This document shows positions 3,322 through 56,427 of a stretch of 64,000 nucleotides of DNA, in pieces (within the stretch, counting starts at the first letter, position 1; every line of letters begins with the position of its first letter). The notes under the pieces were generated by a model. It searched no databases. It saw nothing but the letters and a program-made list of their open reading frames with translations, and was not told the origin of the DNA. The stretch lies in the sequence record NC_048182.1, one strand, 5' to 3'. Both the position numbers and the translations under genes were made by a program.

Positions 3322-3363
3322 GCATAGAAGGAGGGAGAAATCCTTCCTTCTATGCTTTTATTT
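3322..3363 (+). terminator. Intrinsic terminator after chmA
   Basis: GCATAGAAGGAGGGA-GAAA-TCCTTCCTTCTATGC 15-bp stem followed by TTTTATTTT. Confidence 0.85.
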
Positions 3364-3379
3364 TAGGAGTTTTATTTTT

Positions 3380-4969
3380 ATGTCTACAATGGCTGAGATT
3401 CTCGATAAGTTTAACGAGCACTCAATGATTCCATCTATCCTCTTCGATAAGATGTTGCAAGATACCGGAATCAAACCAAAGCCTGATGATCAAAGTTTCT
3501 ATAGTGCGTTGTATCCGGACTTCGATGACTATGATCTGAAGCATAACACTTCTGTGACTCCTCCTATCTATCTTAACGACTTTGACTTCAATATTGAAGA
3601 AGATCGTTTAGCTGTGGTAGAACTTCTTCGTACTGAATACGAAGGCAACAACTTCGATACGGTAGCGGCCTGTCGTTGTAAGAAATATCGTAGCAACAGT
3701 TATCTGGGTTCCAGTTTCATCTGTGATAATTGTGGCGAACCAGTGATCAAACCACTGACCAACAAAATCGAAACCAAAGTCTGGCTTAAGCGCCCAGCTC
3801 GTGTTTCAGGTTTCCTGTCTCCAGCAATGTACGCGGTATTCTTTAGTAAGCTGAATACCAAATCTCCAAAGGTCAATATCGTTGACTATTGGATTAACGA
3901 AGATATCCGTAAGGAAAAGCGTTTCAAAGATGAAAACAACAATGCGTTTAAAATTGCGCAGAAGTTGGAAGCTTTCCGGACAACTCTTGGGATTGAGTTC
4001 GGTTACAATAGCTTCGTTGAAAACATCGATTTAATCATTCGTGGTGCGATCGAACATGATGTTGGAAAGATTGTTGATTTGGCAGAATCAGATCGTGCAA
4101 ACTTTTCTCTGTTCTGGGAGAAGTACCGTAAGAAAGCGGTATTCAGTTTCCTGCCACTTCCTAACAAAATCACTACGGTTGTAGAAAGCGACCAACGTGA
4201 CCGTTATGTCAATAAAGAGCAAACCGATCTGGATAAGATCTACTTTACTCTGGCTGACACTTATCCTGAAGACGACGTTCGTGTTGATGAAAACGAAGTG
4301 TTGATGGGTAAGAATATGAAAGCGCTGGTTGATGCGCTAGCGGAAGTGCAGAAGAACATTCTGTTCGGTAAGAAAGGGATGATTCGTTATCATGCCGGTG
4401 CTGGTAAACTACCATTTACTGGTCGTTCTATTATTACCGGTGAATCTGGCGTGTGTCGTTCTGATACTGTCGTGTTACCATGGCTGTACGGAATCACCTG
4501 TCTGGATAAACACTTAACCAGTTGGTTGTATCGCAAAGGTTTGACACCTCTGAAAATCAAAGAGGTTATCCGAACTGCAGCATACACTCGTCATCCTTTA
4601 GTAGAGGAATTCTATAACTGGATTGAAACGAACAAGTATGCAATGATCACAGCGGGTCGTAACCCGTCAATCCAATACTTGTCTGCTCGTGGATTCTTCT
4701 GTACCTTTAACAGAGACCTCGATGACAAATCAATCCGTATTCCAATTACCACTGTTAAAGAATTTGGTGCTGACTTCGATGGCGACCAGATGTATGTGAT
4801 CTTCATTCCGGATATGATGTCCAAGATTGAAGCATATTCTAGCTGGGGACACCATCAGATGTTGGATCCAAACAAACCGTTTAAAACCAGTCGTTTTGCA
4901 ACCCATACCAAGACCAACCTGTTGAACGTTAACGCGTTGTTCTTGGATGAAGAAATAGCGGAATATTAA
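3380..4969 (+). CDS. Non-virion RNA polymerase beta'-like subunit, N-terminal part (phiKZ gp55-like)
   Basis: Zn finger CRC...CDNC; KKGMIRYH..GKLPFTGRSII (cf. RpoC [22 protein letters not shown]); GRNPSI; catalytic FGADFDGDQM. Confidence 0.93.
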   Translation: MSTMAEILDKFNEHSMIPSILFDKMLQDTGIKPKPDDQSFYSALYPDFDDYDLKHNTSVTPPIYLNDFDFNIEEDRLAVVELLRTEYEGNNFDTVAACRCKKYRSNSYLGSSFICDNCGEPVIKPLTNKIETKVWLKRPARVSGFLSPAMYAVFFSKLNTKSPKVNIVDYWINEDIRKEKRFKDENNNAFKIAQKLEAFRTTLGIEFGYNSFVENIDLIIRGAIEHDVGKIVDLAESDRANFSLFWEKYRKKAVFSFLPLPNKITTVVESDQRDRYVNKEQTDLDKIYFTLADTYPEDDVRVDENEVLMGKNMKALVDALAEVQKNILFGKKGMIRYHAGAGKLPFTGRSIITGESGVCRSDTVVLPWLYGITCLDKHLTSWLYRKGLTPLKIKEVIRTAAYTRHPLVEEFYNWIETNKYAMITAGRNPSIQYLSARGFFCTFNRDLDDKSIRIPITTVKEFGADFDGDQMYVIFIPDMMSKIEAYSSWGHHQMLDPNKPFKTSRFATHTKTNLLNVNALFLDEEIAEY

Positions 4970-5637
4970 TGTTAAATGCAACCAGTGCGTTCTCAAGAGC
5001 ATGTTCCGGAGCGATGACCGAAGGAAGTGCAAATGCGTTTGACCAGTACATCGGAAACTTCTACCAGAAGTATGAGAATCTGACTGGATGGTTAGGCGAT
5101 ACCGTACAATCGGTTAAAGACGCTCATCGGAACTTTATGGATAGTCGGATGTGGGAATTTGGAAACCGCATCAATGGGAAGGATGGTCAGTATGTGGGTC
5201 GTTTCGAAATCGGGTATTTGTCTGAGGTTGGTTATCAACAACAGGCAACCGGATTCATGCGGGATTACATCATGGCTAACCCAGGCGCCATGGCTCTTTA
5301 TGAAGTCGGGCGAATCTCTGGTTATGATGGAGACTTCAGTGAGTTGTGTAATGGTATCGGTCGTGAAAACTATTACTACAACAAAGCTATCGATGGCATG
5401 GTTCAGTATGATAAAGAGAACGAAACTCTTACTCGTACAGTTTATACCTCCAGTCGCGATAATCTCACTCACCTCACATTTGCTGAACGTGTTGATATTC
5501 ATCGTACCTGGCAAGCCACCAACCTTCACCTTGCTAAAGAACTGGCTGACCCTACTCACATTGCGGGTGGGAACATGCTGACTCCAGAACAAGTAGAAGA
5601 GTTGAAAGCTAAAATGGCTGCTGAAGCCGGAGATTAA
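4969..5637 (+). CDS. Conserved hypothetical protein of the nucleus core block
   Basis: 222-aa ORF coupled to the upstream gene (TAATG overlap) and followed by a terminator. Confidence 0.8.
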   Translation: MLNATSAFSRACSGAMTEGSANAFDQYIGNFYQKYENLTGWLGDTVQSVKDAHRNFMDSRMWEFGNRINGKDGQYVGRFEIGYLSEVGYQQQATGFMRDYIMANPGAMALYEVGRISGYDGDFSELCNGIGRENYYYNKAIDGMVQYDKENETLTRTVYTSSRDNLTHLTFAERVDIHRTWQATNLHLAKELADPTHIAGGNMLTPEQVEELKAKMAAEAGD

Positions 5638-5643
5638 AAGTAA

Positions 5644-5690
5644 GTAGGGATCCTTCGGGGTCCCTACCCTTTATGTTCTTTATTTTTTTT
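5644..5690 (+). terminator. Intrinsic terminator
   Basis: GTAGGGATCC-TTCG-GGGTCCCTAC with cUUCGg loop, then TTTATGTTCTTTATTTTTTTT. Confidence 0.85.
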
Positions 5691-5733
5691 TTACCAATGA
5701 TTTGACTACTTCCACAACAAGGTAAAAACAAAC

Positions 5734-6195: not shown

Positions 6196-6298
6196 GTAGC
6201 ATGTAAGTGCCGGGTGTGAAAGCTCTTGCTGTTCACTTATATCAATTTCAGACCTATATCGGTTAGACCCAGGTCTATCCTTATAGAGAGAAATAATT

Positions 6299-6454: not shown

Positions 6455-6461
6455 CCAGAAC

Positions 6462-6489
6462 TAGGGATCTCCTTAACCGGAGATCCCTA
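6462..6489 (+). terminator. Hairpin terminator
   Basis: TAGGGATCTCC-TTAACC-GGAGATCCCTA, T-run about 12 nt later. Confidence 0.7.
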
Positions 6490-6530
6490 TCTTCCACCCA
6501 TTTATTTTTTTTTGTATCGAGGAAAGTATT

Positions 6531-7750: not shown

Positions 7751-7774
7751 TAACCAGTGGGTGTAGAGGAAATT

Positions 7775-10521: not shown

Positions 10522-10554
10522 AACCTAGAGAGCTTCGCGCTCTCTAGGTTTTTA
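10522..10554 (+). terminator. Intrinsic terminator
   Basis: AACCTAGAGAGC-TTCGC-GCTCTCTAGGTT followed by TTTA. Confidence 0.85.
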
Positions 10555-15369: not shown

Positions 15370-15420
15370 CTACCTCCAACCCGCAAAGGTTGGAGGTAGC
15401 TTTACTTTCTTTTTTTCTTT
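15370..15420. terminator. Bidirectional terminator at a convergent junction
   Basis: CTACCTCCAACC-CGCAAA-GGTTGGAGGTAG followed by a long T tract. Confidence 0.85.
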
Positions 15421-20878: not shown

Positions 20879-21112
20879 GTGGAAATCAAAGATATTCCCG
20901 ACATGAAGCCAGGAGAATGCTTCCAAGTATTATCCAACGAAGGTGGAATTGTCAAAGCCCCATGTGTCAGAAAGATTCTTGCTGTGGGGACTAAAACAGT
21001 CGCCTCGACAGAATTCAACGATCGTGGGTATCACTACAAACTGAAGATGGAAAACTATCTTCGTAGTGAAAAGATGAAAGATGGTAACATCGTTCATATA
21101 TTCAGCAAATAA
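20879..21112 (+). CDS. Hypothetical protein
   Basis: 77 aa, GTG start after AAGGA, stop abuts a terminator. Confidence 0.65.
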   Translation: MEIKDIPDMKPGECFQVLSNEGGIVKAPCVRKILAVGTKTVASTEFNDRGYHYKLKMENYLRSEKMKDGNIVHIFSK

Positions 21113-21140
21113 GCTAAGGGGGTCTTCGGATCCCTTTAGC
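21113..21140 (+). terminator. Hairpin terminator
   Basis: 12-bp stem with cUUCGg loop, followed by TCTATGTTTATTT. Confidence 0.8.
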
Positions 21141-21163
21141 TCTATGTTTATTTATAAGAGGCA

Positions 21164-21808
21164 ATGATGGAAGAGCAACTGTACGAAGTAAGAGAACAAG
21201 ATAAGCGGGGCAAAGAAGAAACAACCTTAGCTATTAGCGGGTATGTGGCGAGTGTTCTTGATCAAACAGCTAACGAAGTTCTTACTAAAGCTGGACCGGT
21301 CAAAGCTACTGAAGAATTGCTGCGGGCGCAGTTGAATATGATTGTTCCCACCGCTGGTCATATTGCTCGTTGTGCGGGCGTTGATGAGCAAGATGTTATC
21401 GACTCTTTAGAGATAGTAATGGATAAATATCTCAAAGAGAAACTAACCAACCATCAATGGTCAGCTAAAGGCGGGATGGTTCTAGCCGAATTACTCCTAA
21501 ACAGCTCTTACTCTTTGAGCAGCGATATTTACCTTTCTGGCACTGAAGCAGAAATTGATGTTGTCACTCTGGATTCCATTACCGGTCTGGATGGTGAAGA
21601 AATCGAATTTACCGAAACCGGGGGTAGGCGTTTCGTTCCTTCATTCGACAGTAAAGAAGATGGGAAGTATATCCTTCATTACTTCGTGAAAGATACCGAA
21701 GATAAGGTTCTGCTGAAACTGACTGCCTCTTACGACCACAACACCAAAGTGGTTAAAGCTGACGGCTTCGGCTGGGAACGTTGTGTAATTCGTATCGACC
21801 TTAAATAA
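21164..21808 (+). CDS. Hypothetical acidic protein
   Basis: 214 aa, AGAGG RBS. Confidence 0.75.
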   Translation: MMEEQLYEVREQDKRGKEETTLAISGYVASVLDQTANEVLTKAGPVKATEELLRAQLNMIVPTAGHIARCAGVDEQDVIDSLEIVMDKYLKEKLTNHQWSAKGGMVLAELLLNSSYSLSSDIYLSGTEAEIDVVTLDSITGLDGEEIEFTETGGRRFVPSFDSKEDGKYILHYFVKDTEDKVLLKLTASYDHNTKVVKADGFGWERCVIRIDLK

Positions 21809-21813
21809 GTTCA

Positions 21814-21834
21814 GGTAGATATCATTTAAGTGTT
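21814..21834 (+). promoter_or_regulatory. Putative early phage promoter
   Basis: GGTAGATATCATTTAAGTGT fits ATATYATY-N4-TGT; upstream of the helicase. Confidence 0.4.
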
Positions 21835-21943
21835 ATTCTAAAGGGGACGTTATAATTTACTGCAGAGCTAATTAGTTAGTGAAGTATTCTTTGGAAACCC
21901 AGCGGTAGCGGGATTCACTAACTATGTGAGAGGTTTATATCAG

Positions 21944-23488
21944 ATGAGACGCACACTTGTGGTGCATAAGGCGAGCACCTACGTTCGGCTTACTGACTTT
22001 AAACCTGAACTCGTACAGCACATATTACGTCCCTTTTGTAAAAGGCACTTTTATAGAGTTCAGAAGCAGCCTATACCAGGCGGTGGCCCAAATGCTTTTA
22101 AGTGGGAAGTCAGTCACGTATTTGCTCGGTTTAATAAAGATCAAACAGAACTGAGATTTAATGCTGAGAAACTTCCTGAGCTTATTAAGTTTATGGAAGA
22201 GAATGGGTATAGCAAATCTCGTATTCAAATTGAGAATGAGCCGGTTATCGAAGCAGCTCCAGCTAAGCTGAAGATGAAAGATCCCAGTATCAAACCTCGA
22301 AACGAGATTCAGATAGACTATACCGAATTCATGGGTGGTCCTAAGCCGCTCGTAGTCAACAACATGGGAACAGGGCAAGGTAAGACCTTCTGTGCTATCT
22401 GGACAGCCGTACAACTCGGTAAGCGAGTTCTGATTACGGTATTACCACGTTATGTGGATATCTGGATTAAAGCATTTGGAGAGTTCCTTGATATCCACCC
22501 AACCGACATACTGGTTGCGGATACATTTGGTATTGAGCGATTGCACCAGACCATGAAAGACGGTTTGATTAATCCATCAATCATCATCCTTCCTTTAACG
22601 AAAATCGACGTTTATATCAAACGTATGAAGGATGAGCCAGACCTTCCTGGATTGGATGAAGTGTTTGCTGATTTGAAATGCGGTTTCCGTATTATCGATG
22701 AAGCTCACGAATCTATCTATTCTGTTTATATGTCACTAATGTTCGGCAACCATGCTAAGACCGCAGCACTGTCTGCTACATTGCAAGGTGATGACGAATT
22801 CATTAATGGTATCTATAATCAGATTTTCCCTTATCACTGTTATCTGAGACCTCCTGAGTACACGAAATACATTCACGTTATAGCGTACAGCCATCGCATG
22901 GATGTAAACCGGTACAGAATTAACGCCAAGGGATTTGGCGGGTATTCGCATGTTAAGTTCGAACAAGCCATTATGAAACGTAGTGACGTGTTTGAACAGT
23001 ATTACCAGATGCTTAAAGAAGCATTCGTGGTTTACTATCTGGATACCTACAGGGAAGGTCAGAAAGCGATGTGGTTCTTCCAGACTGTGGAAATATGTGA
23101 ACTCTTCCTGAAAAGGTTGAAGAAGGATTATCCAGATTTGGATGCCATCGTGTTCACAGCCGAGCAGTCCAGTAAGAAAGAAACCAAGACAGCATATCGC
23201 GAGCACAGAGTCGTTATAACGACACCTGGTTCATGTGGTACAGGTAAGGACATCCCTCAGCTGTATATCGTGTTCTGTCCCGTCTCAGTGAGTTCTACGC
23301 AAAGGAACGACCAGATGGTTGGGCGTACTCGTCCGATTGACAAATGGTGGCCTGACTTGGATCCTATCTTCCTTTACTTTGTATGTCCTGACGTACCGAA
23401 ACAGGTTGAATATCACAGGAAGCGTAAAACAATCTTTGATAAGAAGATGAAGAAATTCACTCTTATCGACAGTGGCTCACGTATTTAA
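21944..23488 (+). CDS. SF2 (UvsW-like, DEAH) helicase (phiKZ gp75-like)
   Basis: Walker A MGTGQGKT, IIDEAH, SAT motif III, GTGKDIP, QMVGRTR; alternative GTG start at 21926. Confidence 0.9.
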   Translation: MRRTLVVHKASTYVRLTDFKPELVQHILRPFCKRHFYRVQKQPIPGGGPNAFKWEVSHVFARFNKDQTELRFNAEKLPELIKFMEENGYSKSRIQIENEPVIEAAPAKLKMKDPSIKPRNEIQIDYTEFMGGPKPLVVNNMGTGQGKTFCAIWTAVQLGKRVLITVLPRYVDIWIKAFGEFLDIHPTDILVADTFGIERLHQTMKDGLINPSIIILPLTKIDVYIKRMKDEPDLPGLDEVFADLKCGFRIIDEAHESIYSVYMSLMFGNHAKTAALSATLQGDDEFINGIYNQIFPYHCYLRPPEYTKYIHVIAYSHRMDVNRYRINAKGFGGYSHVKFEQAIMKRSDVFEQYYQMLKEAFVVYYLDTYREGQKAMWFFQTVEICELFLKRLKKDYPDLDAIVFTAEQSSKKETKTAYREHRVVITTPGSCGTGKDIPQLYIVFCPVSVSSTQRNDQMVGRTRPIDKWWPDLDPIFLYFVCPDVPKQVEYHRKRKTIFDKKMKKFTLIDSGSRI

Positions 23489-23492
23489 AAAC

Positions 23493-23526
23493 TAAACTCT
23501 GGGGACTTTGTAGTCCCCAGAGTTTA
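23493..23526 (+). terminator. Hairpin terminator
   Basis: TAAACTCTGGGGACT-TTGT-AGTCCCCAGAGTTTA. Confidence 0.75.
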
Positions 23527-23543
23527 TACGTTTGGCGGTAACC

Positions 23544-23942
23544 ATGTTTATTGAATATGTAACATTGAACTTATCCTTTCCAACCATCCAGAATACCAAA
23601 ACCCTGGAATGTCTAGGGCAAGGTTTGATGGTACTGTTGGATGGCCATTTTAATAACGGTCTGGACATAGACGACACTCTTCTTGTCCATAATGCAAAAT
23701 TAACTATGGGAGATTGTGCTTCAGAACTCTGCATGAATAATGATGCAGATTTTGACATCATCTACGATAATGCAAGTAATGCTCTAACGCTGACTCTAGC
23801 GACGTATTGCGACGATATAAAGAACTTTGCTCTACAGCTAACATCTATAGCTGATATCATGATGTTCGAATATCCTGGCATGCTACGGTTTTGTGTGAGA
23901 GAAGGAGTAACCCAGTTTGGAAGTGGTGTCTTATACATTTAA
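23544..23942 (+). CDS. Hypothetical protein
   Basis: About 132-aa ORF; start uncertain (ORF track gives TTG 23532). Confidence 0.6.
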   Translation: MFIEYVTLNLSFPTIQNTKTLECLGQGLMVLLDGHFNNGLDIDDTLLVHNAKLTMGDCASELCMNNDADFDIIYDNASNALTLTLATYCDDIKNFALQLTSIADIMMFEYPGMLRFCVREGVTQFGSGVLYI

Positions 23943-24276
23943 GAATCCCAAGATTATAAACGCTATTTACTCTAATCAGAATTATCTGGTTGAGATCATT
24001 GCCTTTATGCTTGGTGAGAAAGTCATTGTGGGGCCGAACGAAGAACCAGAGTTCCATAGTGACATGTATGACTACTTGTTAACTATCTTGGACCCTCTGG
24101 ACATTCCATCGGCTAACCTGATTATGGAAGAGATAAACAAGCACATTAAACACTTGACCAATGATTATGTGTTTAAAAGCTTGCATCTCACTGGAGAGGT
24201 CTTTCTAAAGTATGACTACCGCATTGAACCAAGATTTAGTAGGATTCAGTTCTACTCCATCGATTCCGATTGTTGA
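23917..24276 (+). CDS. Hypothetical protein
   Basis: 119 aa, TTG start with AAGGAG 8 nt upstream, overlapping the previous stop. Confidence 0.6.
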   Translation: MEVVSYTFKNPKIINAIYSNQNYLVEIIAFMLGEKVIVGPNEEPEFHSDMYDYLLTILDPLDIPSANLIMEEINKHIKHLTNDYVFKSLHLTGEVFLKYDYRIEPRFSRIQFYSIDSDC

Positions 24277-24340
24277 TCTTTACGATATCGTAAATAACAA
24301 ATCCATTAACACTTTAAAATCCGTTGAGGAATATTTGAAC

Positions 24341-24871
24341 ATGTCTTTGAATACAACTGCAAACGCCGCTGCTATTGCTCCTGAATCCAATATGGTTACT
24401 TATCGTTTCAAGTCTGCAGATCTGGGTGATCTGTTTGAAAACTTTTCCGGCGAGCAGGCTCATGTTGCACTGGAAGGTGCATTAAACGTTATCTTTGGTC
24501 GTGGGAATGCCCTGGCTGTAGGTGTGCCTGATGAAGATGGTAGCATTCTGTCAGAAGACGACGAGAAAGCAAACCACGAAGCTCAGATTACTTCTGAGGT
24601 GGCATTTGCTCTGGCTACCTATCAACTGTCCAATGCAGAACTGGACATGCCAGAAGACATTACGCTGGATCCTATCTACATGCAGATGGAAGATCAGTTC
24701 CGTAATGTGGTCACCAAGCTGTCTAATGACATCGCTGCTGATAAAGAAAACCAAGATGTGATCACTCTGCTGGGTGAAATGGAATTCTTTAACCGCATCG
24801 AGTTGTTTAACCATAACTACGATTCCAAAAATGAAGTACTGATGGTTACACTGACCAGCCTTAACGCATAA
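24341..24871 (+). CDS. Hypothetical acidic protein
   Basis: 176 aa from ATG after GAGGA; optimised codons. Confidence 0.7.
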   Translation: MSLNTTANAAAIAPESNMVTYRFKSADLGDLFENFSGEQAHVALEGALNVIFGRGNALAVGVPDEDGSILSEDDEKANHEAQITSEVAFALATYQLSNAELDMPEDITLDPIYMQMEDQFRNVVTKLSNDIAADKENQDVITLLGEMEFFNRIELFNHNYDSKNEVLMVTLTSLNA

Positions 24872-24876
24872 TGCGA

Positions 24877-24925
24877 TCCTACCTACTCCTTCGGGAGTAG
24901 GTAGGGACTATGTTCCTTTTTTATT
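24877..24925 (+). terminator. Intrinsic terminator
   Basis: TCCTACCTACTCC-TTCG-GGAGTAGGTAGGGA, then CTATGTTCCTTTTTT. Confidence 0.85.
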
Positions 24926-24982
24926 TTTGGTTGAATGATATGTAGTAAATTGACAATGGCCTATTAAAACCGGGTAACCAAA

Positions 24983-25774
24983 ATGGAACAAGCATTACAA
25001 GACGTAGATCATTATGCTCGCATCGTATCTGGATGTGAATCTATTAACCACGTATTGAGTGGTAACGGCTCATTGACCGAAGATGGTCGATACGCCCAGT
25101 CAGTATTAAAGCTTCGTGCTCAGGATGAGTTCGGAGCATTAGCAGGAAATGAATCTCTGCTGGAAGGTATCAAGAAAGGTGCTCGTAAATTGAAAGAGTG
25201 GGTCATTGCTCTTGTTAAATCAATTGTTGGTTACCTGACTGGGTCTACCAAAAAAGCTAAAGATGTTATGGCTCGCCACGCTGATGTGGAGAAGAACTAT
25301 AACAAACTGCAAGCTGATCAGAAAGAAAAGATCGAAGAGAAAGCCAAACCAGCAATAACCGCTCATGGTAAAGTCTTTGAACGTATCATTGATAAACTGA
25401 CTTCTCTGCAAGAAGAAGGCAAGAGTTTCTCTCAAATCGGACACACTGTTTCCATGACAGACGTGATTCAAGAAATGAAGAGCGCTCTCAATATGGCTGA
25501 AGCTGGGACATGGATTGCAATCAACGTTCACTTAAAACGTGCTGTTGATCGTTTAAATGGTCAGATTAACTCAGTTAAAGATAAACTGAACTCTTATGCC
25601 AATGGTGAAGAAACTACCGAGCGTAATAGTTTGGCTAGCAAAGCAGCTGCCTGGGAAAACAAGGCAGTCGCCGTCAGTCATTCAATCGTAATGAACATGG
25701 ACGGAATCACCAAGAAAGGTGAGCAGTGGTTAGACGACTTTATGACCAATAAAGATACTGTCTTGAAATTGTAA
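24983..25774 (+). CDS. Internal head protein paralog (shared leader, G-x-E maturation sites)
   Basis: Leader DVDHYARIVSGCES...DGRYAQSVLKLRAQD...AGNES, then amphipathic KKGARKLKEWV; same leader in five other ORFs. Confidence 0.75.
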   Translation: MEQALQDVDHYARIVSGCESINHVLSGNGSLTEDGRYAQSVLKLRAQDEFGALAGNESLLEGIKKGARKLKEWVIALVKSIVGYLTGSTKKAKDVMARHADVEKNYNKLQADQKEKIEEKAKPAITAHGKVFERIIDKLTSLQEEGKSFSQIGHTVSMTDVIQEMKSALNMAEAGTWIAINVHLKRAVDRLNGQINSVKDKLNSYANGEETTERNSLASKAAAWENKAVAVSHSIVMNMDGITKKGEQWLDDFMTNKDTVLKL

Positions 25775-25784
25775 TCATATTTTA

Positions 25785-25817
25785 ATCCTTACCCTCTTGT
25801 AGGGTAAGGATGTTATG
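25785..25817 (+). terminator. Hairpin terminator followed by ATGTTATG (possible late promoter)
   Basis: ATCCTTACCCT-CTTGT-AGGGTAAGGAT then GTTATG. Confidence 0.7.
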
Positions 25818-25845
25818 CTCTATTAACACACTTTGGAAATTAAAA

Positions 25846-26592
25846 ATGGAAATCAATTTCGACGATATCGAACACTATGCCCGTATTGTGGCAGGGTGCG
25901 AGTCTATTAATAATGTGTTTGTCAATGGCGGTAAACTGACCGACGACGGTCGTTATGCACAGACAGTTCTTCGTGTCCATGCTCAAGACGATCTGGGTGC
26001 GTTTGCTGGTAATGAATCTGTTGGCTCGGCTATCAAAGCCGGTGCCGCTAATGTCATCAAATGGATTAAGGAATTCATTAAATCCATTAGTAACGCTTTG
26101 GAGAGCCTTGGGGCAAGCTTCAGCAAATCTAAACTTGATGCTGCTACCAAACAAGTAAAAGAAGAAATCAAAAACGATTTTGATGAAGCATGGAAATCGT
26201 ACACTGGTCCTCTTGAAACCGCACTTGCTGCAGTTAAAATGGCTAATGATAATAAATCAGAAGCATTAGGTCAGTTAAATAATCTGGATCTCGCGATTAA
26301 GAATCTGCAAAGAACTCTTGACTCTGCCAAAGAAAAAGATATCTCATCATTCCACAATAACCTGTGGTCTGCAACAGAAATTCTGCGGATTAACATTCCT
26401 CGTTGTAACAAAGCGTTGGAAGCGTATGTTACCAAAGAAGGCAAGAAAGATGGAGAGGTAACTCAAGCTACTTCTAACATCAAAGGCCTTACCCTGGCTT
26501 TAAGCAAACTTAGCTTCGTCACTAAAAAGTATATTGACGATGCCGGTAAAATGTACGACAAAGTCAAAGCTGCCGAAAAGAAAGATAAATAA
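25846..26592 (+). CDS. Internal head protein paralog
   Basis: DDIEHYARIVAGCES...DGRYAQTVLRVHAQD...AGNES; start moved to MEINF. Confidence 0.75.
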   Translation: MEINFDDIEHYARIVAGCESINNVFVNGGKLTDDGRYAQTVLRVHAQDDLGAFAGNESVGSAIKAGAANVIKWIKEFIKSISNALESLGASFSKSKLDAATKQVKEEIKNDFDEAWKSYTGPLETALAAVKMANDNKSEALGQLNNLDLAIKNLQRTLDSAKEKDISSFHNNLWSATEILRINIPRCNKALEAYVTKEGKKDGEVTQATSNIKGLTLALSKLSFVTKKYIDDAGKMYDKVKAAEKKDK

Positions 26593-26598
26593 TCATAG

Positions 26599-26629
26599 CT
26601 CCTCATCTCTCCTAGTGGGGGATGAGGGT
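26599..26629 (+). terminator. Hairpin terminator
   Basis: CCTCATCTCTC-CTAGT-GGGGGATGAGG. Confidence 0.65.
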
Positions 26630-26641
26630 TAAGGAACAATC

Positions 26642-27679
26642 ATGTCAACAGAATTATTGAAATCTATGTATGCTGGGGTTGAAGATATTAGTTCGGGCGT
26701 TATGTCTGAAGACTCTATCTACGCAGCAGCTGTTATGGGCGGTGAAGGATTCCTGGACAGCGTTAAGAAAGGTGCTCAAGCAACCATTGCTTGGATTAAA
26801 CAACTTTTGAATAACATCCTTGATGCCATTCTCTTTTGGTTCGGAGGTCGTGATACCGTTAAACGTAAGTTAGATGAACTTAAGCGCAGTAAGTTTTTCT
26901 CTATGTTTAAAAGTGATATCACTAATAAAGTTGAAAAGGTAACATTACCTGCCGTCGCTATTGCCTGGAACTTTGTTGAAGATATTATTGAAACTGAATA
27001 TCAGGATTTCCATAATGATAAATTAAAGGAAACCCCAGAGATTCGCTCTTTCTTTGTGACTGTTAATGCGCTTGCTGATAGTTTAAGTAAATATTGTAAA
27101 GCAGCTAAACACAGTCCTAGTGAGGATCATTTAAACCTTGAGCCACACCTTCAAGAAGTCCGCAAGTGTGTTGAAGCTGGACGTAAATTAGTCACGGCTT
27201 TGGATAAAGAGAAAGAGCCAGACCAGGGGATTATTAAAAATATTAACGGATGTGTTGTCAAATTAGGTAAAGCCACTAATGTGATGATATCCGCGATGAA
27301 GACCGTAAGCAAAGGTCTTGACGAACTAAGTAATAAAGCAGCCGCTAAAGCTATTTATAGTAGGTCAATGCAAACCGCCATAGAAAGTGGTAGCAATAAT
27401 CGAATTAAATCGGCCATCCAAGCAGAAATAGAAGATAGTAGAAAATCTCCAGAAGAAATAAATGAAATCATTGCTCTACTGGAAAAAGACATGCCCGATG
27501 TATTTGATCCTTATGAAGAAAGTACTCTGGCAAAAGAACTTGCTCCTAAATCAGAGTGGAGCGGTAAAACTTATGAACTCCAATCTGCTTATTACATGAT
27601 GAATGGATCTAAGAAACGACTACATCATTTAAGAGACATCCGCAACTACCTTCACGAAAATAAAATAGACGGATTCTAA
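26642..27679 (+). CDS. Internal head protein paralog with extra C-terminal domain
   Basis: AGVE and GGE-GFLDSVKKGAQATIAWIK motif; about 110-aa additional C-terminal segment. Confidence 0.7.
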   Translation: MSTELLKSMYAGVEDISSGVMSEDSIYAAAVMGGEGFLDSVKKGAQATIAWIKQLLNNILDAILFWFGGRDTVKRKLDELKRSKFFSMFKSDITNKVEKVTLPAVAIAWNFVEDIIETEYQDFHNDKLKETPEIRSFFVTVNALADSLSKYCKAAKHSPSEDHLNLEPHLQEVRKCVEAGRKLVTALDKEKEPDQGIIKNINGCVVKLGKATNVMISAMKTVSKGLDELSNKAAAKAIYSRSMQTAIESGSNNRIKSAIQAEIEDSRKSPEEINEIIALLEKDMPDVFDPYEESTLAKELAPKSEWSGKTYELQSAYYMMNGSKKRLHHLRDIRNYLHENKIDGF

Positions 27680-27695: not shown

Positions 27696-27734
27696 ATATT
27701 CCCTTACCCTTCCTTTCGGGAGGGTAAGGGTTAT
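27696..27734. terminator. Bidirectional terminator; identical 39-bp copy at 42145-42183
   Basis: ATATTCCCTTACCCTTCCTTTCGGGAGGGTAAGGGTTAT at a convergent junction. Confidence 0.85.
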
Positions 27735-27737
27735 ATA

Positions 27738-33359: not shown

Positions 33360-33362
33360 TCG

Positions 33363-33394
33363 TATCCTGGCCTTCCTTCGGGGAGGTCAGGGTA
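33363..33394 (+). terminator. Hairpin terminator
   Basis: TATCCTGGCCTTCC-TTCG-GGGAGGTCAGGGTA. Confidence 0.8.
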
Positions 33395-33427
33395 TTATTT
33401 GTCTATTACAACAACAGGGCTATCACA

Positions 33428-36265: not shown

Positions 36266-36312
36266 ACAAACATATTCCCCTACCCCTCCTCACGGAGTGG
36301 GTAGGGGTTATG
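36265..36312. terminator. Bidirectional terminator, third member of the repeated family
   Basis: AACAAACATATTCCCCTACCCCTCC-TCAC-GGAGTGGGTAGGGGTTATG; flanks match those of 42138-42184. Confidence 0.8.
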
Positions 36313-36313
36313 C

Positions 36314-38059
36314 TTATGCAGCGCGTTTTTTGTTCAGGTAAGGTATAACAGACTCTTCATAGAAAGAGTTGATGTCAGTAATCTGTGGCATACCAAAGAT
36401 GGTGTTGCACAGAGTGGTTGCGTTAGCAATTGGAGATGACGCGTAGTTAACCCCTACACGACGGAACTCGAAACGGTCCAAACCTTCAATCTCACAAACT
36501 TCCAACTTGGTAGTCTTGTTGGACACGTTCAATGAAACTGTGATATGCGGATAAGCACCAGTTACGTCAATGTCATCTGTATCACCACGACCACGACTAC
36601 GCCATGATGGAAGACCGTCATAGATAGCTTTACCTTTATCTTCGTTCAGCTCAGCATGAAGCAGAGCAATCCAGTCACGCAGGTCTGGCTTAATCTCTTT
36701 CAGTAGATCTTCTTTCTTACGGCCAACAGTACCCCAGACATAACCGTGTTCTTTTGCAATGAACGACAGCTTATCTGAAATCATAGAAGGCTGAGACTGA
36801 TAAGACTTCAGCTCAGAAGAAGTCACCAGAGATGGTAACGAGATAGAGTAGTCATTTGTTTTACGGTTCAGGTCTTCAATTACCCAGTTATCTCGGATGT
36901 TATACATTACGTATTCATAAGGATAATTGGCAACCATGAATTTGTGCCACTCAGGAGAACCTGGTTGCAGATGTTCAGCTTCTGGAATGTACAGCTTACC
37001 TTCCACCCCTTCAGCGATAGCGGTGTTCTGCAACGAGTAAGATTCTTTCTTACCCATAGGAGCACGTTTAATCGCATAGAAGGACATCCCATCGAACCAC
37101 TGCCATTTAGCAGGTGCCTGAACAACAGGGAAACGTTCCTGAGGTTCTAATGGGGATTGTGAGCCATCTACCTTACGTTTGAACTCACGTCCTTTAAAGT
37201 AGAAGTAATCTTGATATGGTTTCGGAATAGACGGGTCAGAATAAACCTGAGCTAAGTCATAGTTTTCATTCTTCAGTGCATTCTCGTTTTGTTCCATATC
37301 GAAGTTTGCGTTCCATGAAACGATGAAGTCCATTCCACGTTTATGCCAGAACTGAATGTTGTTATAAACAACTTGACCTGAGGTATCTGCTAATACCCAA
37401 TCAATAGTGACGCCATGCTTTTCCATATAGTCTTTGAGGTGAATTGCTGCACACTCATTCAACTTACGGATAATGATCGCATCATCTTTCTGATCTTCTT
37501 TAGGGAAGTAAGAACGAAGCCCAGACCAATACGCTAGTTCTTTGATGGTAGTTGATGCCATGTTAATTGGACCCACAGAACCATCTTTCAAGATGTAGGT
37601 CTCAACGTCGTATGCACCAACTTCAAATGTTTCAGCAGGCTGATGGTCAGGATACTTATCATAGAACATTTGCTTATAGATAACAGGAACTGTTTCCTGA
37701 CACCCAAACAAATAAGGACTGTTCTTCATCTCGGCTAAGAAGGCTTTGCGGTCTGGACGACCATATAACGCTTTGTGAATGTTATTCGCCAGGTTAGCTT
37801 CGTTAGAAGTATGACGATCACATTTAGACATTTCAATGTAATCGCGTTTATCATTGAACTTACGCAACTTAGGCTTGACGGTATAGAAGTCACGTCTAAA
37901 GTCTTCAATTTGGCGCAGTTCTGTTGTGCGTGTTCCGTCTGCATGAATGTTTGTAATCTTGGCCGTAAGAAGATCGTGACCAGGATTAAATTTGTTGAAC
38001 GATAAGTACGCATGCTTACACGCGCGTCCAACAATTGGATTCTCTGTCTTATCTGTCAT
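36314..38059 (-). CDS. Split family-B DNA polymerase, exonuclease + motif A subunit (phiKZ gp82-like)
   Basis: Exo I YDVET, Exo II SWNANFD, Exo III YNIRD, motif A DIDVTGAYP near the C-terminus; motifs B and C absent. Confidence 0.85.
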   Translation of the reverse strand: MTDKTENPIVGRACKHAYLSFNKFNPGHDLLTAKITNIHADGTRTTELRQIEDFRRDFYTVKPKLRKFNDKRDYIEMSKCDRHTSNEANLANNIHKALYGRPDRKAFLAEMKNSPYLFGCQETVPVIYKQMFYDKYPDHQPAETFEVGAYDVETYILKDGSVGPINMASTTIKELAYWSGLRSYFPKEDQKDDAIIIRKLNECAAIHLKDYMEKHGVTIDWVLADTSGQVVYNNIQFWHKRGMDFIVSWNANFDMEQNENALKNENYDLAQVYSDPSIPKPYQDYFYFKGREFKRKVDGSQSPLEPQERFPVVQAPAKWQWFDGMSFYAIKRAPMGKKESYSLQNTAIAEGVEGKLYIPEAEHLQPGSPEWHKFMVANYPYEYVMYNIRDNWVIEDLNRKTNDYSISLPSLVTSSELKSYQSQPSMISDKLSFIAKEHGYVWGTVGRKKEDLLKEIKPDLRDWIALLHAELNEDKGKAIYDGLPSWRSRGRGDTDDIDVTGAYPHITVSLNVSNKTTKLEVCEIEGLDRFEFRRVGVNYASSPIANATTLCNTIFGMPQITDINSFYEESVIPYLNKKRAA

Positions 38060-38070
38060 GAAGCACCCGA

Positions 38071-38078
38071 ATGTTATG
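38071..38078 (+). promoter_or_regulatory. Putative late promoter core (ATGTTATG)
   Basis: Same 8-mer at 25810, 52309 and 56420, each upstream of structural genes; contains the TATG of phiKZ late promoters. Confidence 0.45.
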
Positions 38079-38144
38079 ACGTCTTGAGTTAGATTTTCTA
38101 CATAATCGAACTCGCCCTTTTATTTTACTCCCGGAGTTACAATA

Positions 38145-42139: not shown

Positions 42140-42144
42140 CAAAC

Positions 42145-42183
42145 ATATTCCCTTACCCTTCCTTTCGGGAGGGTAAGGGTTAT
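42145..42183. terminator. Bidirectional terminator identical to 27696-27734
   Basis: Exact 39-bp duplicate at a convergent junction. Confidence 0.85.
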
Positions 42184-42186
42184 GTA

Positions 42187-50925: not shown

Positions 50926-50961
50926 ATCGTTTTAAACATCTCTTTTGAATAAGGTATTACT

Positions 50962-52239: not shown

Positions 52240-52257
52240 TCTCTCTGATTAAACTTC

Positions 52258-52305
52258 CATGAGAGTAGGAGCCTTCGGGCTCCTACTCTTTATGTTTGTT
52301 TATTT
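52258..52305 (+). terminator. Intrinsic terminator
   Basis: GAGAGTAGGAGCC-TTCG-GGCTCCTACTCTT, then TATGTTTGTTTATTT. Confidence 0.85.
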
Positions 52306-52336
52306 AGGATGTTATGATCTAACTAGAGGAACCATT

Positions 52337-53889: not shown

Positions 53890-54497
53890 TCTATGAAAAC
53901 AAAGATCGGTACCTGTTGGTTAAGCAGACTTTAGTCATGCTAGAAATGGCTCGCTTAAATGCGGTTGTTTCGATCAACGGTGTCAGTACCGATGTAAGTA
54001 AGCTTGAAGGCACTATCATTAACGCTCTGGCTGATATCGAGAGAAATTTCACACTCCCCCGTGAAATGATTGAAGATTCCCCAATCTATCTTGATTTAAG
54101 TTATGAGGCTGTTCTGGTAAATGGAATGAACGAACCTGTTAAGGTGGGTGATGACCGCCGTCGTCATATTCCTAATACCCCGGATGAAATGCACGATGTT
54201 ATTTTCAAATACCCATCGTTCGAAAACTACGTTGCTAAATACAATGAAAACTTGAAGAACCAAAGTTTCTTTGACAAAAGCCGTAAGTTTGCTGGTGATC
54301 TAATCACCGCCAGTTCTTCAAGCATTCAGACCATCCGTAAATGGGCAGAAGGTCGTGGTGACCAGGAAATGAAACTGGGCCAGATCCTTTTATTGGTAAA
54401 CATGGTGGAAACTATCGAATGGTTATTCGACTTCACCAATGCAACTTCTCGGAGACAGATCCTCAATGTCGACAACGATCCAACAAATGGATGCTGA
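53886..54497 (+). CDS. Hypothetical virion-cluster protein
   Basis: 203 aa, ATGA overlap. Confidence 0.7.
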   Translation: MIYENKDRYLLVKQTLVMLEMARLNAVVSINGVSTDVSKLEGTIINALADIERNFTLPREMIEDSPIYLDLSYEAVLVNGMNEPVKVGDDRRRHIPNTPDEMHDVIFKYPSFENYVAKYNENLKNQSFFDKSRKFAGDLITASSSSIQTIRKWAEGRGDQEMKLGQILLLVNMVETIEWLFDFTNATSRRQILNVDNDPTNGC

Positions 54498-55419
54498 GTT
54501 TGATATGATCGACTGGTTATATGGCGGTTTAGAATCTGTGCTTTGTGACAAGTACAACTTCGCCGCCATGTCCGGTAATGAATCATATTACTGTTATCAC
54601 TTTGACATTTGGAACGGTATGGAAGCCGAAGCCACTTCCAGCTCTTCCACAACCACCACTACCTCTTCTTCAGGTTCTTCTACTGAAAAGACCACATCTA
54701 CTAAATCTTCCAGTACTACTAAACCGAATGCAAGTTCCGGTGGGAAAATGAAGGCTTATGCAGATTCAGTCAAGAAGGTAGCTCAGAACCTTTATAAGAA
54801 CCTTATAGACATGCTTAAGCGTGTACGTGAGTATTTCTTCGGGGAAGGTGAACAAGCTGCTGTAGAGGCTGCTAAGGACGCTACAGAGGCTGTTGAAGGT
54901 TTGAATGCACTGCAAGGTGCAGCACCTGTGCCTGATGATGCAGCTGCTCGTGATCCTAATGTCTTTATGAAAGCCCTTCAAGGCGGGGAAGAATTCCAGG
55001 AGATTCTTAAAGAGTATCCGGATTTGGCTTCTGCTATTGATAAGGTAAGCAAAGCAGCCCAGAACATCGGTAACTCTGATACCGTGGTAAAACTTCGTAC
55101 TAACTACGCTGAACTGGTTAAAAGTGCCAATGCTGGTATTCAGTCTGTTGGTGGAGCTTTGCGTCGTTGTTTATCTGAAGCTGAGAAAAAGACCAACGAA
55201 CTGAAAAACCCTAAAGTTCCTGAAGAGGGCGATACCACTGAAGTTAAAGAAGGTATCAAGCAGGAAAACTCTCAGGTCATTGAACAGGCCAAAGAGAACA
55301 CCAAGAAAGCACGTTTGATTGGTGGGGTTCGTAATAAGCTGGTTGCTGCGTTGAACGCTGTTTCTGCTCAGTCTAAAACAGTCAAAGATAAGCCACCGCA
55401 ATCTAAGTTCAAAGGTTAA
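54487..55419 (+). CDS. Internal head protein paralog with Ser/Thr-rich linker
   Basis: GGLE, SGNE and NGME sites; S/T tract; DSVKKVAQNLYKNLIDMLKRVREYFFG amphipathic motif. Confidence 0.7.
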   Translation: MDAEFDMIDWLYGGLESVLCDKYNFAAMSGNESYYCYHFDIWNGMEAEATSSSSTTTTTSSSGSSTEKTTSTKSSSTTKPNASSGGKMKAYADSVKKVAQNLYKNLIDMLKRVREYFFGEGEQAAVEAAKDATEAVEGLNALQGAAPVPDDAAARDPNVFMKALQGGEEFQEILKEYPDLASAIDKVSKAAQNIGNSDTVVKLRTNYAELVKSANAGIQSVGGALRRCLSEAEKKTNELKNPKVPEEGDTTEVKEGIKQENSQVIEQAKENTKKARLIGGVRNKLVAALNAVSAQSKTVKDKPPQSKFKG

Positions 55420-55420
55420 T

Positions 55421-56359
55421 ATGTATTCATTCAAAGATGAACTACTTAAACAACTTCCCGAAGGTTATAAGTTCACACGTATCTACGCAACGAGTGAAAC
55501 GGAAACTATTGTAGAAGCTTCTGTAAACGCTTCTAACAAGGTTTTCACCCTTCCGAAGATGGATATCTCATCTTTGTTCAAAAAGGTCCCTACGATCGCC
55601 GTAGGGACTGATTGGACATATAACGATCTGTACAAAAAGATCAGTGATATCTATTCCTTAGGTTTGGAACAGGGAATTGACTATTATAACAATGATGCGG
55701 TAAAACCTTCTGTATCGCTCAGATACGAAGAACTACCGTTATCGGTAGACAGTTATGGCTATTATGGGAATATCCCGTGTCACGTCGTTATAGGAACTCT
55801 TATGGGTATCTCTAACGAAGTACAGCGAGATCTCCGTAGTAACATGGCTCCTTACCTGAAAGCGCTCAAACTGCAGTCCTTCCTAATGTCTAAACGTTTT
55901 GGATGTGTCAGTGGTTCTAACTTCATAGGAGACCGATTCAGTGGGTCATTCATTGAAGCTATTAGTGAGCAAGCAAAGCAAGAGCTCGATGAGACGGTTA
56001 GCCATCACCTTAGTAGTGTGCTCCGTAATTCTGTCATTGACTTTTTCTTTAGCGACGGGTTATCTGATATTTGTTCTCTTAAGAACTCTTCTAGTGAGGT
56101 TTTCTTAATCCGTGTTAAAACAACTCCTAATGACATTCCAATAATTTCTAACGAGACTATTGATCTTGAGACTAGTAACTCGAAAGGGTTGTTAGTTGGA
56201 ATGAGATTGAGAATGTCGGAGAATCCGGATGAGGGGAAGGGGGAAATTAATATACAGCAGAGCGATAGCGATATCTCTGTTCTATCTGTTCCTCCAGAGG
56301 AGAGTACTGAAGAAGTTACTCCCGCTCCAGTTAAGAAAACAAGAAAGAAGAAATCATGA
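55421..56359 (+). CDS. Hypothetical protein
   Basis: 312 aa, AT-rich, basic C-terminus KKTRKKKS. Confidence 0.7.
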   Translation: MYSFKDELLKQLPEGYKFTRIYATSETETIVEASVNASNKVFTLPKMDISSLFKKVPTIAVGTDWTYNDLYKKISDIYSLGLEQGIDYYNNDAVKPSVSLRYEELPLSVDSYGYYGNIPCHVVIGTLMGISNEVQRDLRSNMAPYLKALKLQSFLMSKRFGCVSGSNFIGDRFSGSFIEAISEQAKQELDETVSHHLSSVLRNSVIDFFFSDGLSDICSLKNSSSEVFLIRVKTTPNDIPIISNETIDLETSNSKGLLVGMRLRMSENPDEGKGEINIQQSDSDISVLSVPPEESTEEVTPAPVKKTRKKKS

Positions 56360-56381
56360 ACAGTACAGAACTAGTTTAAAC

Positions 56382-56427
56382 AAATCCTCTTACTCCTTTA
56401 ATTAGGGGTAAGGGGTTTGATGTTATG
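56382..56427 (+). terminator. Hairpin terminator followed by ATGTTATG
   Basis: AAATCCTCTTACTCCT-TTAATT-AGGGGTAAGGGGTTT then GATGTTATG. Confidence 0.7.

What the first reader, a model, noticed from the sequence alone, without database searches (positions are those of the whole stretch)
3322..56427. Intergenic hairpins are followed by TATG(T/C)T, on both strands at convergent junctions
TATG occurs within about 6 nt of the 3' arm (or inside it) at 3351, 5672, 21143, 24909, 25814, 36309, 42181, 52291 and 56424 on +, and on - at 26594-26597, 36271-36274 and 42144-42147. Most copies continue as (T/C)T, and many of these hairpins have poor U-tracts. At convergent junctions no gene lies downstream, so a plain late promoter does not explain it. 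Options: (a) a sequence-specific terminator element read by the phage RNAPs (hairpin + UAUG); (b) a hairpin-assisted TATG promoter, since phiKZ nvRNAP recognises TATG and needs help melting DNA, which would produce antisense RNA; (c) a protein-binding or processing site. I excluded the cases near 24870 and 61290-61343 because they are just GCA-TAA gene ends.
Basis: partly seen in the sequence, partly recalled or inferred. Interest (0 to 1): 0.65.

Follow-up and report, generated by a model that had tools for sequence, protein, structure and literature searches.

The report
Jumbo-phage terminator hairpins ending in TATG
The hairpin-plus-TATG signals are real and far beyond chance, but they are this Edwardsiella jumbo phage's copies of the transcription stop signal already mapped in its relative phiKZ, mirrored where two genes meet head-on, and not a new kind of promoter.

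Summary
The window is bases 1-64000 of Edwardsiella phage pEt-SU, a phiKZ/OBP-like jumbo phage. All 12 listed sites exist.

**Enrichment.** Genome-wide, TATG starts within -6..+8 nt of the 3' end of 37 of 99 strong intergenic hairpins, against 7.5 expected. It is the most enriched of all 256 4-mers. The same holds in Pantoea phage Survivor, OBP and phiKZ.

**Known motif.** It matches the published phiKZ terminator motif (a hairpin followed by TTAT-K-Y-Y-G-T).

**Experimental cross-check.** I used phiKZ's published RNA-end tables.

| TATG class in phiKZ | n | At a mapped 3' end | At a start site |
|---|---|---|---|
| Hairpin-adjacent | 74 | 40% | 2.7% |
| Other intergenic | 188 | 1.6% | 13% |

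**Supporting sequence evidence.** The motif is commonest at convergent junctions. The stems fold better as sense RNA. TATG is kept at 20 of 23 orthologous junctions although the stems change.

**Verdict.** Option (a), a terminator element, is supported. Option (b), a hairpin-assisted promoter, is not. What the four letters do inside the terminator is still open.

**Site-level exceptions.**
- 3351 is incidental stem sequence.
- 26594 is probably chance.
- 56424 looks like a separate late-type promoter (ATGTTATGA) sitting behind a terminator.

The scan has reached the same conclusion on other jumbo phages. This is a new member of a known kind.

The parts
3322..3355 (+). Terminator hairpin behind the nuclear-shell (chimallin) gene gp002. 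TATG 3351-3354 is part of the 3' arm, and a real T-run follows.
   Evidence: In Survivor the word is TCTG with a compensating change on the other arm, so this TATG is incidental.
5644..5675 (+). Terminator hairpin 5644-5667 plus tail TATG 5672-5675, behind gp005.
   Evidence: Survivor has a different stem with compensating changes and an almost unchanged CCTTTATGT-then-T-run tail, differing at one base.
21112..21146 (+). Terminator hairpin 21112-21141 plus tail TATG 21143-21146, behind gp021.
24878..24912 (+). Terminator hairpin 24878-24905 plus tail TATG 24909-24912, behind gp026.
   Evidence: Survivor has TATT here. A metagenome variant changes only the T-run at 24917.
25776..25817 (.). Short member of the CCTTACCC hairpin family (25785-25811) with TATG on both sides: 25814-25817 on + and 25776-25779 on -.
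26594..26627 (+). Hairpin 26601-26627 behind gp028 with no TATG on the sense side. The listed TATG 26594-26597 is on the antisense strand.
   Evidence: The antisense sides of tandem junctions carry TATG in only 3 of 23 cases, so this one is probably chance.
27701..27730 (.). Two-way family hairpin between convergent gp029 and gp030. The tails are degenerate (TATA and TATT) in this phage.
   Evidence: Survivor and OBP have CATA...TATG at the orthologous junction.
36271..36312 (.). Two-way terminator between convergent gp038 and the DNA polymerase gene gp039. Hairpin 36277-36307, TATG 36309-36312 (+) and 36271-36274 (-).
   Evidence: CATA...TATG is kept in Survivor and OBP although the stems vary.
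42144..42184 (.). Two-way terminator between convergent gp043 and gp044. Hairpin 42150-42179, TATG 42181-42184 (+) and 42144-42147 (-).
   Evidence: Kept in Survivor and OBP.
52262..52294 (+). Terminator hairpin 52262-52289 plus tail TATG 52291-52294, behind the internal head protein gene gp050.
   Evidence: Survivor has an unrelated stem but the same TTTATGTTTGTTT tail.
52309..52317 (+). ATGTTATGA (TATG 52313-52316), a candidate late-type promoter 18 nt behind the terminator tail and 20 nt before gp051.
   Evidence: Closely related in Survivor and OBP (OBP has ATGCTATGA). Four of the five genomic copies of the 9-mer lie 20-66 nt upstream of a start codon. The layout resembles phiKZ P049 and P075.
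56381..56428 (+). Terminator hairpin 56381-56419 behind gp055, followed by ATGTTATGA 56420-56428 (the listed TATG 56424-56427), 23 nt before virion gene gp056.
   Evidence: The word and its spacing are kept in Survivor and OBP. It fits the promoter-like 9-mer, not the terminator tail.
61289..61343 (.). Two-way hairpin 61297-61328 between convergent gp059 and the helicase gene gp060. TATG 61340-61343 (+) and 61289-61292 (-) overlap the GCA-TAA gene ends.
   Evidence: The stems are wholly different in Survivor and OBP.
15370..15399 (.). Two-way terminator hairpin without TATG (comparison class). Other terminator-like hairpins without TATG lie at 6462-6489, 10522-10550, 23493-23526 and 33362-33395.
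38071..38079 (+). ATGTTATGA without any hairpin, 66 nt before virion gene gp040. A candidate late-type promoter.

Best explanation
These are phiKZ-type factor-independent terminators. When a phage RNA polymerase passes a stop codon, the transcript folds into a G+C-rich hairpin. The RNA ends a few bases beyond the stem, at or next to the G of a (T/A)TATG(T/C)T tail that stands where bacteria have a U-run.

Where two genes converge, a single palindromic element (CATA-hairpin-TATG) ends transcripts from both sides. This is why TATG appears on both strands with no gene downstream.

A few TATGs close to hairpins are something else:
- stem sequence (3351);
- chance (26594);
- a separate late-type promoter placed just behind the terminator (56424, and 52313 next to 52291).

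**Shown here:** the anatomy, the enrichment, the orientation, the RNA-level stems, and conservation across genomes.

**Shown for phiKZ from published data:** RNA 3' ends map at the motif and start sites do not.

**Inferred for pEt-SU:** that its RNAs end there too, and that TATG helps pausing or release.
For: **Published motif.** The phiKZ terminator motif is a hairpin followed by TTAT-K-Y-Y-G-T, found at 61 mapped terminators. A similar motif A occurs in 201phi2-1.

**Same enrichment in four genomes.**

| Phage | Hairpins with TATG | Expected |
|---|---|---|
| pEt-SU | 37 of 99 | 7.5 |
| phiKZ | 89 of 227 | 21 |
| OBP | 45 of 113 | 8.5 |
| Survivor | 50 of 100 | 7.4 |

**phiKZ RNA-end tables laid on the genome.**
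- Hairpin-adjacent TATG: 30 of 74 at a mapped 3' end, 2 of 74 at a start site.
- Other intergenic TATG: 3 of 188 at a 3' end, 25 of 188 at a start site.
- The 3' ends cluster at -1 (11), +1 (7) and +2 (9) of the G.

**Orientation and position.** TATG follows 57-77% of sense hairpins at convergent junctions, 33-46% at tandem junctions, and 8-21% of antisense sides (36% in phiKZ).

**RNA-level structure.** Sense RNA folds better than antisense at tandem junctions: 37 loci against 7 in pEt-SU and 42 against 2 in Survivor.

**Conservation.** TATG status is kept at orthologous junctions. 20 of 23 TATG sites keep it and 16 of 19 sites without it stay without it (Fisher p=5e-6). Only 1 of 20 stems is identical (examples).
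Against: - There are no RNA data for pEt-SU, so its 3' ends are inferred.
- In phiKZ, sense hairpins give a mapped 3' end equally often with TATG (55%), with TTAT-not-G (54%) or with neither (58%). TATG is therefore not needed for a detectable 3' end, and its contribution is unproven.
- The first terminators of early-promoter units carry TATG about as often as the others (9 of 23 against 25 of 51, p=0.46). There is no sign of a polymerase-specific code.
- Mapped 3' ends cannot tell termination from trimming or cleavage.
- The phiKZ tables I read cover T001-T121 and P008-P126, not all entries.
- My gene calls are heuristic (279 genes against 285 annotated).
Confidence: 0.75

Rival explanations
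1. Hairpin-assisted or hairpin-adjacent late promoter. The nvRNAP starts at the G of the TATG behind the hairpin. At convergent junctions this would give antisense RNA.
For: TATG with G as +1 is the phiKZ nvRNAP late-promoter word. What else makes a TATG a promoter is an open question. In phiKZ two late start sites lie 6-10 nt behind a terminator tail. In pEt-SU, 56424 and 52313 look like such promoters.
Against: - In phiKZ only 2 of 74 hairpin-adjacent TATGs are start sites, against 25 of 188 other intergenic TATGs. Both of the two use a second TATG.
- P119L has no hairpin upstream.
- The motif is commonest where no gene lies downstream.
- The stems have G-U pairs and fold better as sense RNA, which does not suit DNA cruciforms.
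- A G+C-rich stem sits where the promoter DNA must melt.
Confidence: 0.07
2. RNA processing, stability or protein-binding site. The 3' ends arise by cleavage or trimming at UAUG, or a phage protein binds the hairpin-plus-tail. RNA polymerase does not release there.
For: The 3' ends lie only 3-5 nt from my stem ends in phiKZ, closer than the 7-9 nt usual for bacterial terminators. The stems of one family are conserved in sequence (14 copies). TATG does not change how often a 3' end is detected.
Against: - Eight 201phi2-1 terminators, chosen to cover the motifs, stopped host RNA polymerase in a terminator trap.
- Stems vary freely with compensating changes at orthologous sites. That argues for structure rather than a sequence-specific protein site.
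- No candidate protein is known.
Confidence: 0.12
3. A dispersed palindromic repeat spread by recombination, like the promoter-stem-loop cassettes of T4-type phages. TATG would simply be carried along in its flanks.
For: There are 14 near-identical CCYTACCC...GGGTARGG copies with CATA and TATG flanks, some alike over 40 nt, and none in the reversed control.
Against: TATG is still enriched behind 79 hairpins outside the family (21 against 6.0 expected, with 21 different stems). Orthologous sites keep TATG while their stems diverge. This rival concerns origin, not function, and can be true alongside the terminator reading.
Confidence: 0.05

Closest known systems
Conserved intrinsic-terminator motif of phiKZ (Putzeys et al. 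2024, microLife; PMC10914365) and motif A of 201phi2-1 (PMC11512511)
   Same: A G+C-rich stem-loop with a C-rich 5' arm and a G-rich 3' arm, followed at once by TTAT(G/T) and pyrimidines. It sits behind stop codons and is two-way between convergent genes. Enrichment is of similar size.
   Different: - The pEt-SU stems are longer (11-13 pairs; the family word is CCCYTACCC rather than CCYCCCC).
- G after TAT is much more strictly kept than in phiKZ: TATG/TATA/TATC are 34/7/2 in pEt-SU and 58/39/13 in phiKZ.
- The antisense sides of tandem junctions rarely carry it (13% against 36%).
- No RNA ends have been mapped for pEt-SU.
phiKZ nvRNAP late promoter (TATG, G = +1; Yakunina 2015, PMC4666361; structure in PMC12809450)
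   Same: The same four letters. [quoted passage not shown]
   Different: The model promoter has no hairpin. Hairpin-adjacent TATGs are depleted in start sites. The promoter-like copies in pEt-SU have a different context, ATG(T/C)TATGA.
Canonical bacterial intrinsic terminators, including two-way ones (A-run, hairpin, U-run)
   Same: A G+C-rich RNA hairpin behind the gene. The flanks are mirrored at convergent junctions. Terminators of this phage group work with host RNAP in 201phi2-1 tests.
   Different: There is no proper U-run (about 4 T in 8). A specific TATG word stands in its place.
Hairpin promoters of phage N4 virion RNAP (PMC4496689, listed)
   Same: A hairpin next to a start site. This is the precedent for reader option (b).
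   Different: N4 needs a DNA hairpin extruded from supercoiled DNA. Here the stems are better as RNA than as DNA, and no starts map there in phiKZ. I did not read this paper's details. The comparison rests on its abstract and on general knowledge.

Membership tests
phiKZ-type conserved intrinsic terminator | G+C-rich stem-loop with a C-rich 5' arm and a G-rich 3' arm | tested here: met
phiKZ-type conserved intrinsic terminator | A TTAT(G/T) region directly 3' of the stem | tested here: met
   TATG behind 37 of 99 hairpins and TTAT behind 42 of 99. Offsets peak at +1 to +4.
phiKZ-type conserved intrinsic terminator | Lies behind stop codons in the sense orientation, and is two-way between convergent genes | tested here: met
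phiKZ-type conserved intrinsic terminator | RNA 3' ends map at the motif | not testable with these tools
   No RNA run holds pEt-SU. For phiKZ itself the feature is met: 30 of 74, with offsets -1, +1 and +2.
phiKZ-type conserved intrinsic terminator | The structure acts as RNA (sense strand) | tested here: met
   Sense folds are more stable at 37 tandem loci and antisense folds at 7. G-U pairs occur in 13 of 17 TATG-type tandem stems (that subset was selected on the sense strand).
nvRNAP late promoter | TATG present | tested here: met
   By construction.
nvRNAP late promoter | Transcripts start at the G | tested here: not met
   Tested in phiKZ only: 2 of 74 hairpin-adjacent against 25 of 188 other intergenic TATGs. 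Not testable in pEt-SU.
nvRNAP late promoter | A gene lies downstream in the same orientation | tested here: not met
   The motif is most frequent at convergent junctions (63% in pEt-SU).
Canonical intrinsic terminator | A U-run of about 5 or more in the 8 nt after the stem | tested here: not met
   The mean is 4.3 T in 8. A run of 4 or more T occurs in about 20%. The generic scan misses 24878, 25785 and 36277.

The most novel reading that the evidence does not exclude
The four letters that the phage's non-virion RNA polymerase binds on the non-template strand to choose its start site (TATG) may be re-used during elongation. They would act as the pause-and-release signal behind a hairpin, replacing the bacterial U-run. 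That would be a polymerase-specific terminator code shared across nucleus-forming jumbo phages.

This would explain several observations:
- all four letters are specific;
- 3' ends in phiKZ fall just before or just after the G;
- the word is kept while the stems change;
- U-runs are weak.

Against it:
- hairpins without TATG give 3' ends equally often in phiKZ;
- TATG is not depleted at the first terminators of early-promoter units, which the virion polymerase should reach (9 of 23 against 25 of 51);
- related terminators also stop host RNAP.
Probability: 0.2. Interest if true: 0.7.

Novelty: new member of a known kind. Interest (0 to 1): 0.3.

Why it matters
**Annotation.** The result gives pEt-SU and its relatives a usable map of transcription-unit ends. 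In the window that is about ten one-way or two-way terminators. It also warns annotators not to read every TATG behind a hairpin as a late promoter.

**Open point.** Why the terminator tail carries the very word that the phage polymerase uses to start has not been addressed in the papers I could read. The question is cheap to test in vitro.

**Limits on novelty.** The motif is published for phiKZ and 201phi2-1. This scan has already met it on other jumbo phages, so the finding adds breadth rather than a new principle.

Tried and rejected
- **RNA evidence for pEt-SU.** No RNA run holds it. DNA contigs of near-identical metagenome strains show no listed change in the elements apart from a 1-nt loss in a T-run at 24917. 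Only 40 of 77 differences were listed.
- **Polymerase-class hypothesis.** I asked whether TATG tails are restricted to non-early units. I curated 23 early-promoter-like sites and took the first terminator of each. TATG occurred in 9 of 23 against 25 of 51 elsewhere (p=0.46). Not supported.
- **TATG needed for a 3' end?** In phiKZ a TTS is detected at 55%, 54% and 58% of sense hairpins with TATG, with TTAT-not-G, and with neither. No effect is seen, but efficiency was not measured.
- **General promoter signal.** Hairpin-free intergenic TATGs upstream of genes show no orientation bias (56 sense, 52 antisense). A plain 4-mer count therefore cannot find late promoters.
- **Divergent junctions.** They show no consistent TATGYT element.
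- **Rfam.** No family matches in the window.
- **Ceyssens 2014 (J Virol).** It could not be read here. The supplements of the two journal versions are not held. The bioRxiv supplement was used instead, without parts 6, 9 and 15.
- **First hairpin finder.** It used perfect stems only and missed G-U-containing stems, so I replaced it.

Full report
**Identity of the window.** The window is bases 1-64000 of Edwardsiella phage pEt-SU (276,734 bp, genus Petsuvirus). It is a phiKZ/OBP-like jumbo phage with a nuclear-shell gene and split RNA-polymerase genes. Its closest DNA relatives in the collections are Pantoea phage Survivor (about 81% identity), Pseudomonas phage OBP and Shewanella phage SXP01.

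**The observation.** Folding each listed site confirms a stable G+C-rich hairpin, mostly with a tetraloop, and TATG inside or just behind the 3' arm.

I scanned the whole genome for hairpins, allowing G-U pairs. I trimmed each to its core stem and called genes heuristically (279 genes against 285 annotated, with the stop codons I compared in the first 50 kb agreeing).
- Of 99 strong intergenic hairpins counted per strand, 37 have TATG starting at -6..+8 of the stem end. From intergenic 4-mer frequencies 7.5 are expected (p=6e-17), and TATG ranks first of 256 4-mers.
- Shuffling the flanks gives 5.6 +/- 2.4 against 27 observed.
- Offsets peak at +1 to +4. The aligned consensus is T-TATG-(T/C)-T followed by a T-rich stretch.
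- Each of the four letters is specific.
- The signal is not due to one repeat family. Without the 14-copy CCYTACCC...GGGTARGG family it is still 21 of 79 against 6.0 expected.
- TATGYT as such is not over-represented in the window.

**What is already known.**
- Putzeys et al. (2024) mapped phiKZ RNA ends with ONT-cappable-seq. They report that most intrinsic terminators share a motif: a stem-loop followed by a TTAT region, written BCCYCCCC-HWWD-GGGRRGG-BY-TTAT-KYYGT. They also report two-way terminators between convergent genes.
- The 201phi2-1 study found a similar motif A at 59 terminators. It showed that eight selected terminators stop host RNA polymerase in a trap assay.
- Separately, TATG with G as +1 is the phiKZ late-promoter word. 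The beta-like subunit binds it on the non-template strand.

**Same pattern in relatives.** I ran the same pipeline on three complete genomes fetched. TATG follows 89 of 227 hairpins in phiKZ (21 expected), 45 of 113 in OBP (8.5 expected) and 50 of 100 in Survivor (7.4 expected). A simple pattern, GGG-N0-3-TTATGYT, gives 19, 15 and 19 hits against 0, 3 and 2 for the reversed control.

**Terminator or promoter: sequence tests.**
1. *Position.* TATG follows 63% of sense hairpins at convergent junctions of pEt-SU, 36% at tandem junctions and 13% of the antisense sides of tandem hairpins. The three relatives agree, except that phiKZ elements are more often symmetric. The motif is thus commonest where there is no gene to serve.
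2. *Level of the structure.* At tandem junctions the sense RNA folds better than the antisense RNA at 37 loci and worse at 7 in pEt-SU (42 against 2 in Survivor, 42 against 8 in OBP, 50 against 20 in phiKZ). The reason is G-U pairs, which would be A-C mismatches on the other strand. That fits an RNA hairpin and does not fit a DNA cruciform helping a promoter.
3. *Conservation.* At orthologous junctions of pEt-SU and Survivor, 20 of 23 TATG-type sites keep TATG and 16 of 19 other sites stay without it (Fisher p=5e-6). Only 1 of 20 stem-loops is identical. Junctions 5655 and 52275 show wholly re-paired stems with the tail unchanged or almost so. Junctions 36292 and 42164 keep CATA...TATG in three phages.
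4. *Other TATGs.* Hairpin-free intergenic TATGs upstream of genes show no orientation bias. The polarity therefore belongs to the hairpin.

**Terminator or promoter: experimental cross-check in phiKZ.** The supplement of the bioRxiv version of Putzeys et al. is held. I read TTS entries T001-T121 and TSS entries P008-P126. I checked that the coordinates fit the reference genome.

| TATG class (within the covered range) | n | Start site within 3 nt of the G | 3' end within 4 nt |
|---|---|---|---|
| Hairpin-adjacent | 74 | 2 (2.7%) | 30 (40.5%) |
| Other intergenic | 188 | 25 (13.3%) | 3 (1.6%) |

The odds ratios are 0.18 for start sites (p=0.012) and 42 for 3' ends (p=6e-16). The 3' ends sit at -1 (11 cases), +1 (7), +2 (9) and -3 (3) relative to the G.

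The two start sites both use a second TATG, 6-10 nt behind the terminator's TTAT. The model late promoter P119L has no hairpin. In phiKZ the element therefore marks RNA 3' ends, and promoters merely sometimes sit next to it.

**What TATG does inside the terminator is not settled.**
- In phiKZ a 3' end is detected at 55% of sense hairpins with TATG, 54% with TTAT-not-G and 58% with neither.
- In pEt-SU the first terminator after each of 23 early-promoter-like sites carries TATG about as often as other terminators.

TATG is thus conserved and position-specific, but I could show neither that it is required nor that it is specific to one polymerase. Its identity with the start-site word remains an unexplained coincidence. 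The novel case builds on that.

**Site-by-site in the window.**
- Terminator tails: 5672, 21143, 24909, 25814 and 52291.
- Two-way elements: 36271-36312 and 42144-42184.
- 61289-61343 is a two-way hairpin whose TATGs overlap the GCA-TAA gene ends.
- 27701-27730 is a family member whose tails have decayed to TATA and TATT in this phage only.
- 3351 is stem sequence that co-varies in Survivor.
- 26594 is an antisense-side copy at background frequency.
- 56424 is part of ATGTTATGA. Four of the five genomic copies of this word lie 20-66 nt upstream of start codons of mostly virion genes. It is kept in Survivor, and OBP has the same word or ATGCTATGA. The same word follows the 52291 terminator at 52309-52317. 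These look like late-type promoters placed just behind terminators, as at phiKZ P049 and P075.

**Other checks.** No RNA run holds this phage. Near-identical DNA occurs in silage, insect and sediment metagenomes, and their contigs show no listed change in the elements. Rfam has no match. The read-laying run used 5,901 letters.

**Earlier notes of this scan.** They describe the same hairpin-TATG pattern on other jumbo phages (Serratia, Erwinia, Klebsiella, PhiPA3) and reach the same reading. I treated them as leads and tested the central claim myself.

**Verdict.** Reading (a) is supported in its plain form as a terminator module. Reading (b) is not supported as a general explanation. Reading (c) remains open. 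This is a new member of a known kind, of modest interest.

Noticed in passing
window 38071-38079, 52309-52317, 56420-56428; genome 193327 (-): The 9-mer ATGTTATGA occurs 5 times in the genome. Four copies are intergenic, in sense, 20-66 nt upstream of a start codon (gp040, gp051, gp056 and one minus-strand gene). They are kept in Survivor, and OBP has the same word or ATGCTATGA. It is a candidate extended late-type promoter word, comparable with TGCTATG at several phiKZ late start sites.
   Followed up: partly
window 1287, 10580, 15807; 20 more in the genome (e.g. 65870, 72830, 173385, 176167): A recurrent early-promoter-like motif, roughly CAGAC-N-ATATTA(T/C)-N5-TGTA. It usually lies 30-45 nt behind a terminator hairpin with a T-rich tail, and it resembles the phiKZ early promoter (TATATTAC).
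   Followed up: partly
window 36308-36319; genome 73488-73500: The gene-end word GCATAA is duplicated next to two-way terminators (TTATGCTTATGC at 36308; GCATAACAGCATAA at 73488). One copy holds the stop codon. The other serves as the terminator tail of the opposite strand.
   Followed up: no
window 27696-27736 and 42143-42185: Two terminator elements are nearly identical over about 40 nt, apart from TATG/CATA decayed to TATA/TATT at 27701. The genome holds 14 copies of this conserved-stem family, 4 of them in the window.
   Followed up: partly
window 63520-63545: A hairpin-free TATG (CTATCTTATGCG) lies about 75 nt upstream of the major head protein gene. It is kept in Survivor while neighbouring bases differ. 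A candidate late promoter.
   Followed up: no
window 21000-26900 (metagenome contigs): Near-identical phage DNA occurs in silage, insect and sediment metagenomes. Their short contigs tend to break at the terminator hairpins (23493-23526, 25785-25811), probably an assembly effect of the inverted repeats.
   Followed up: no
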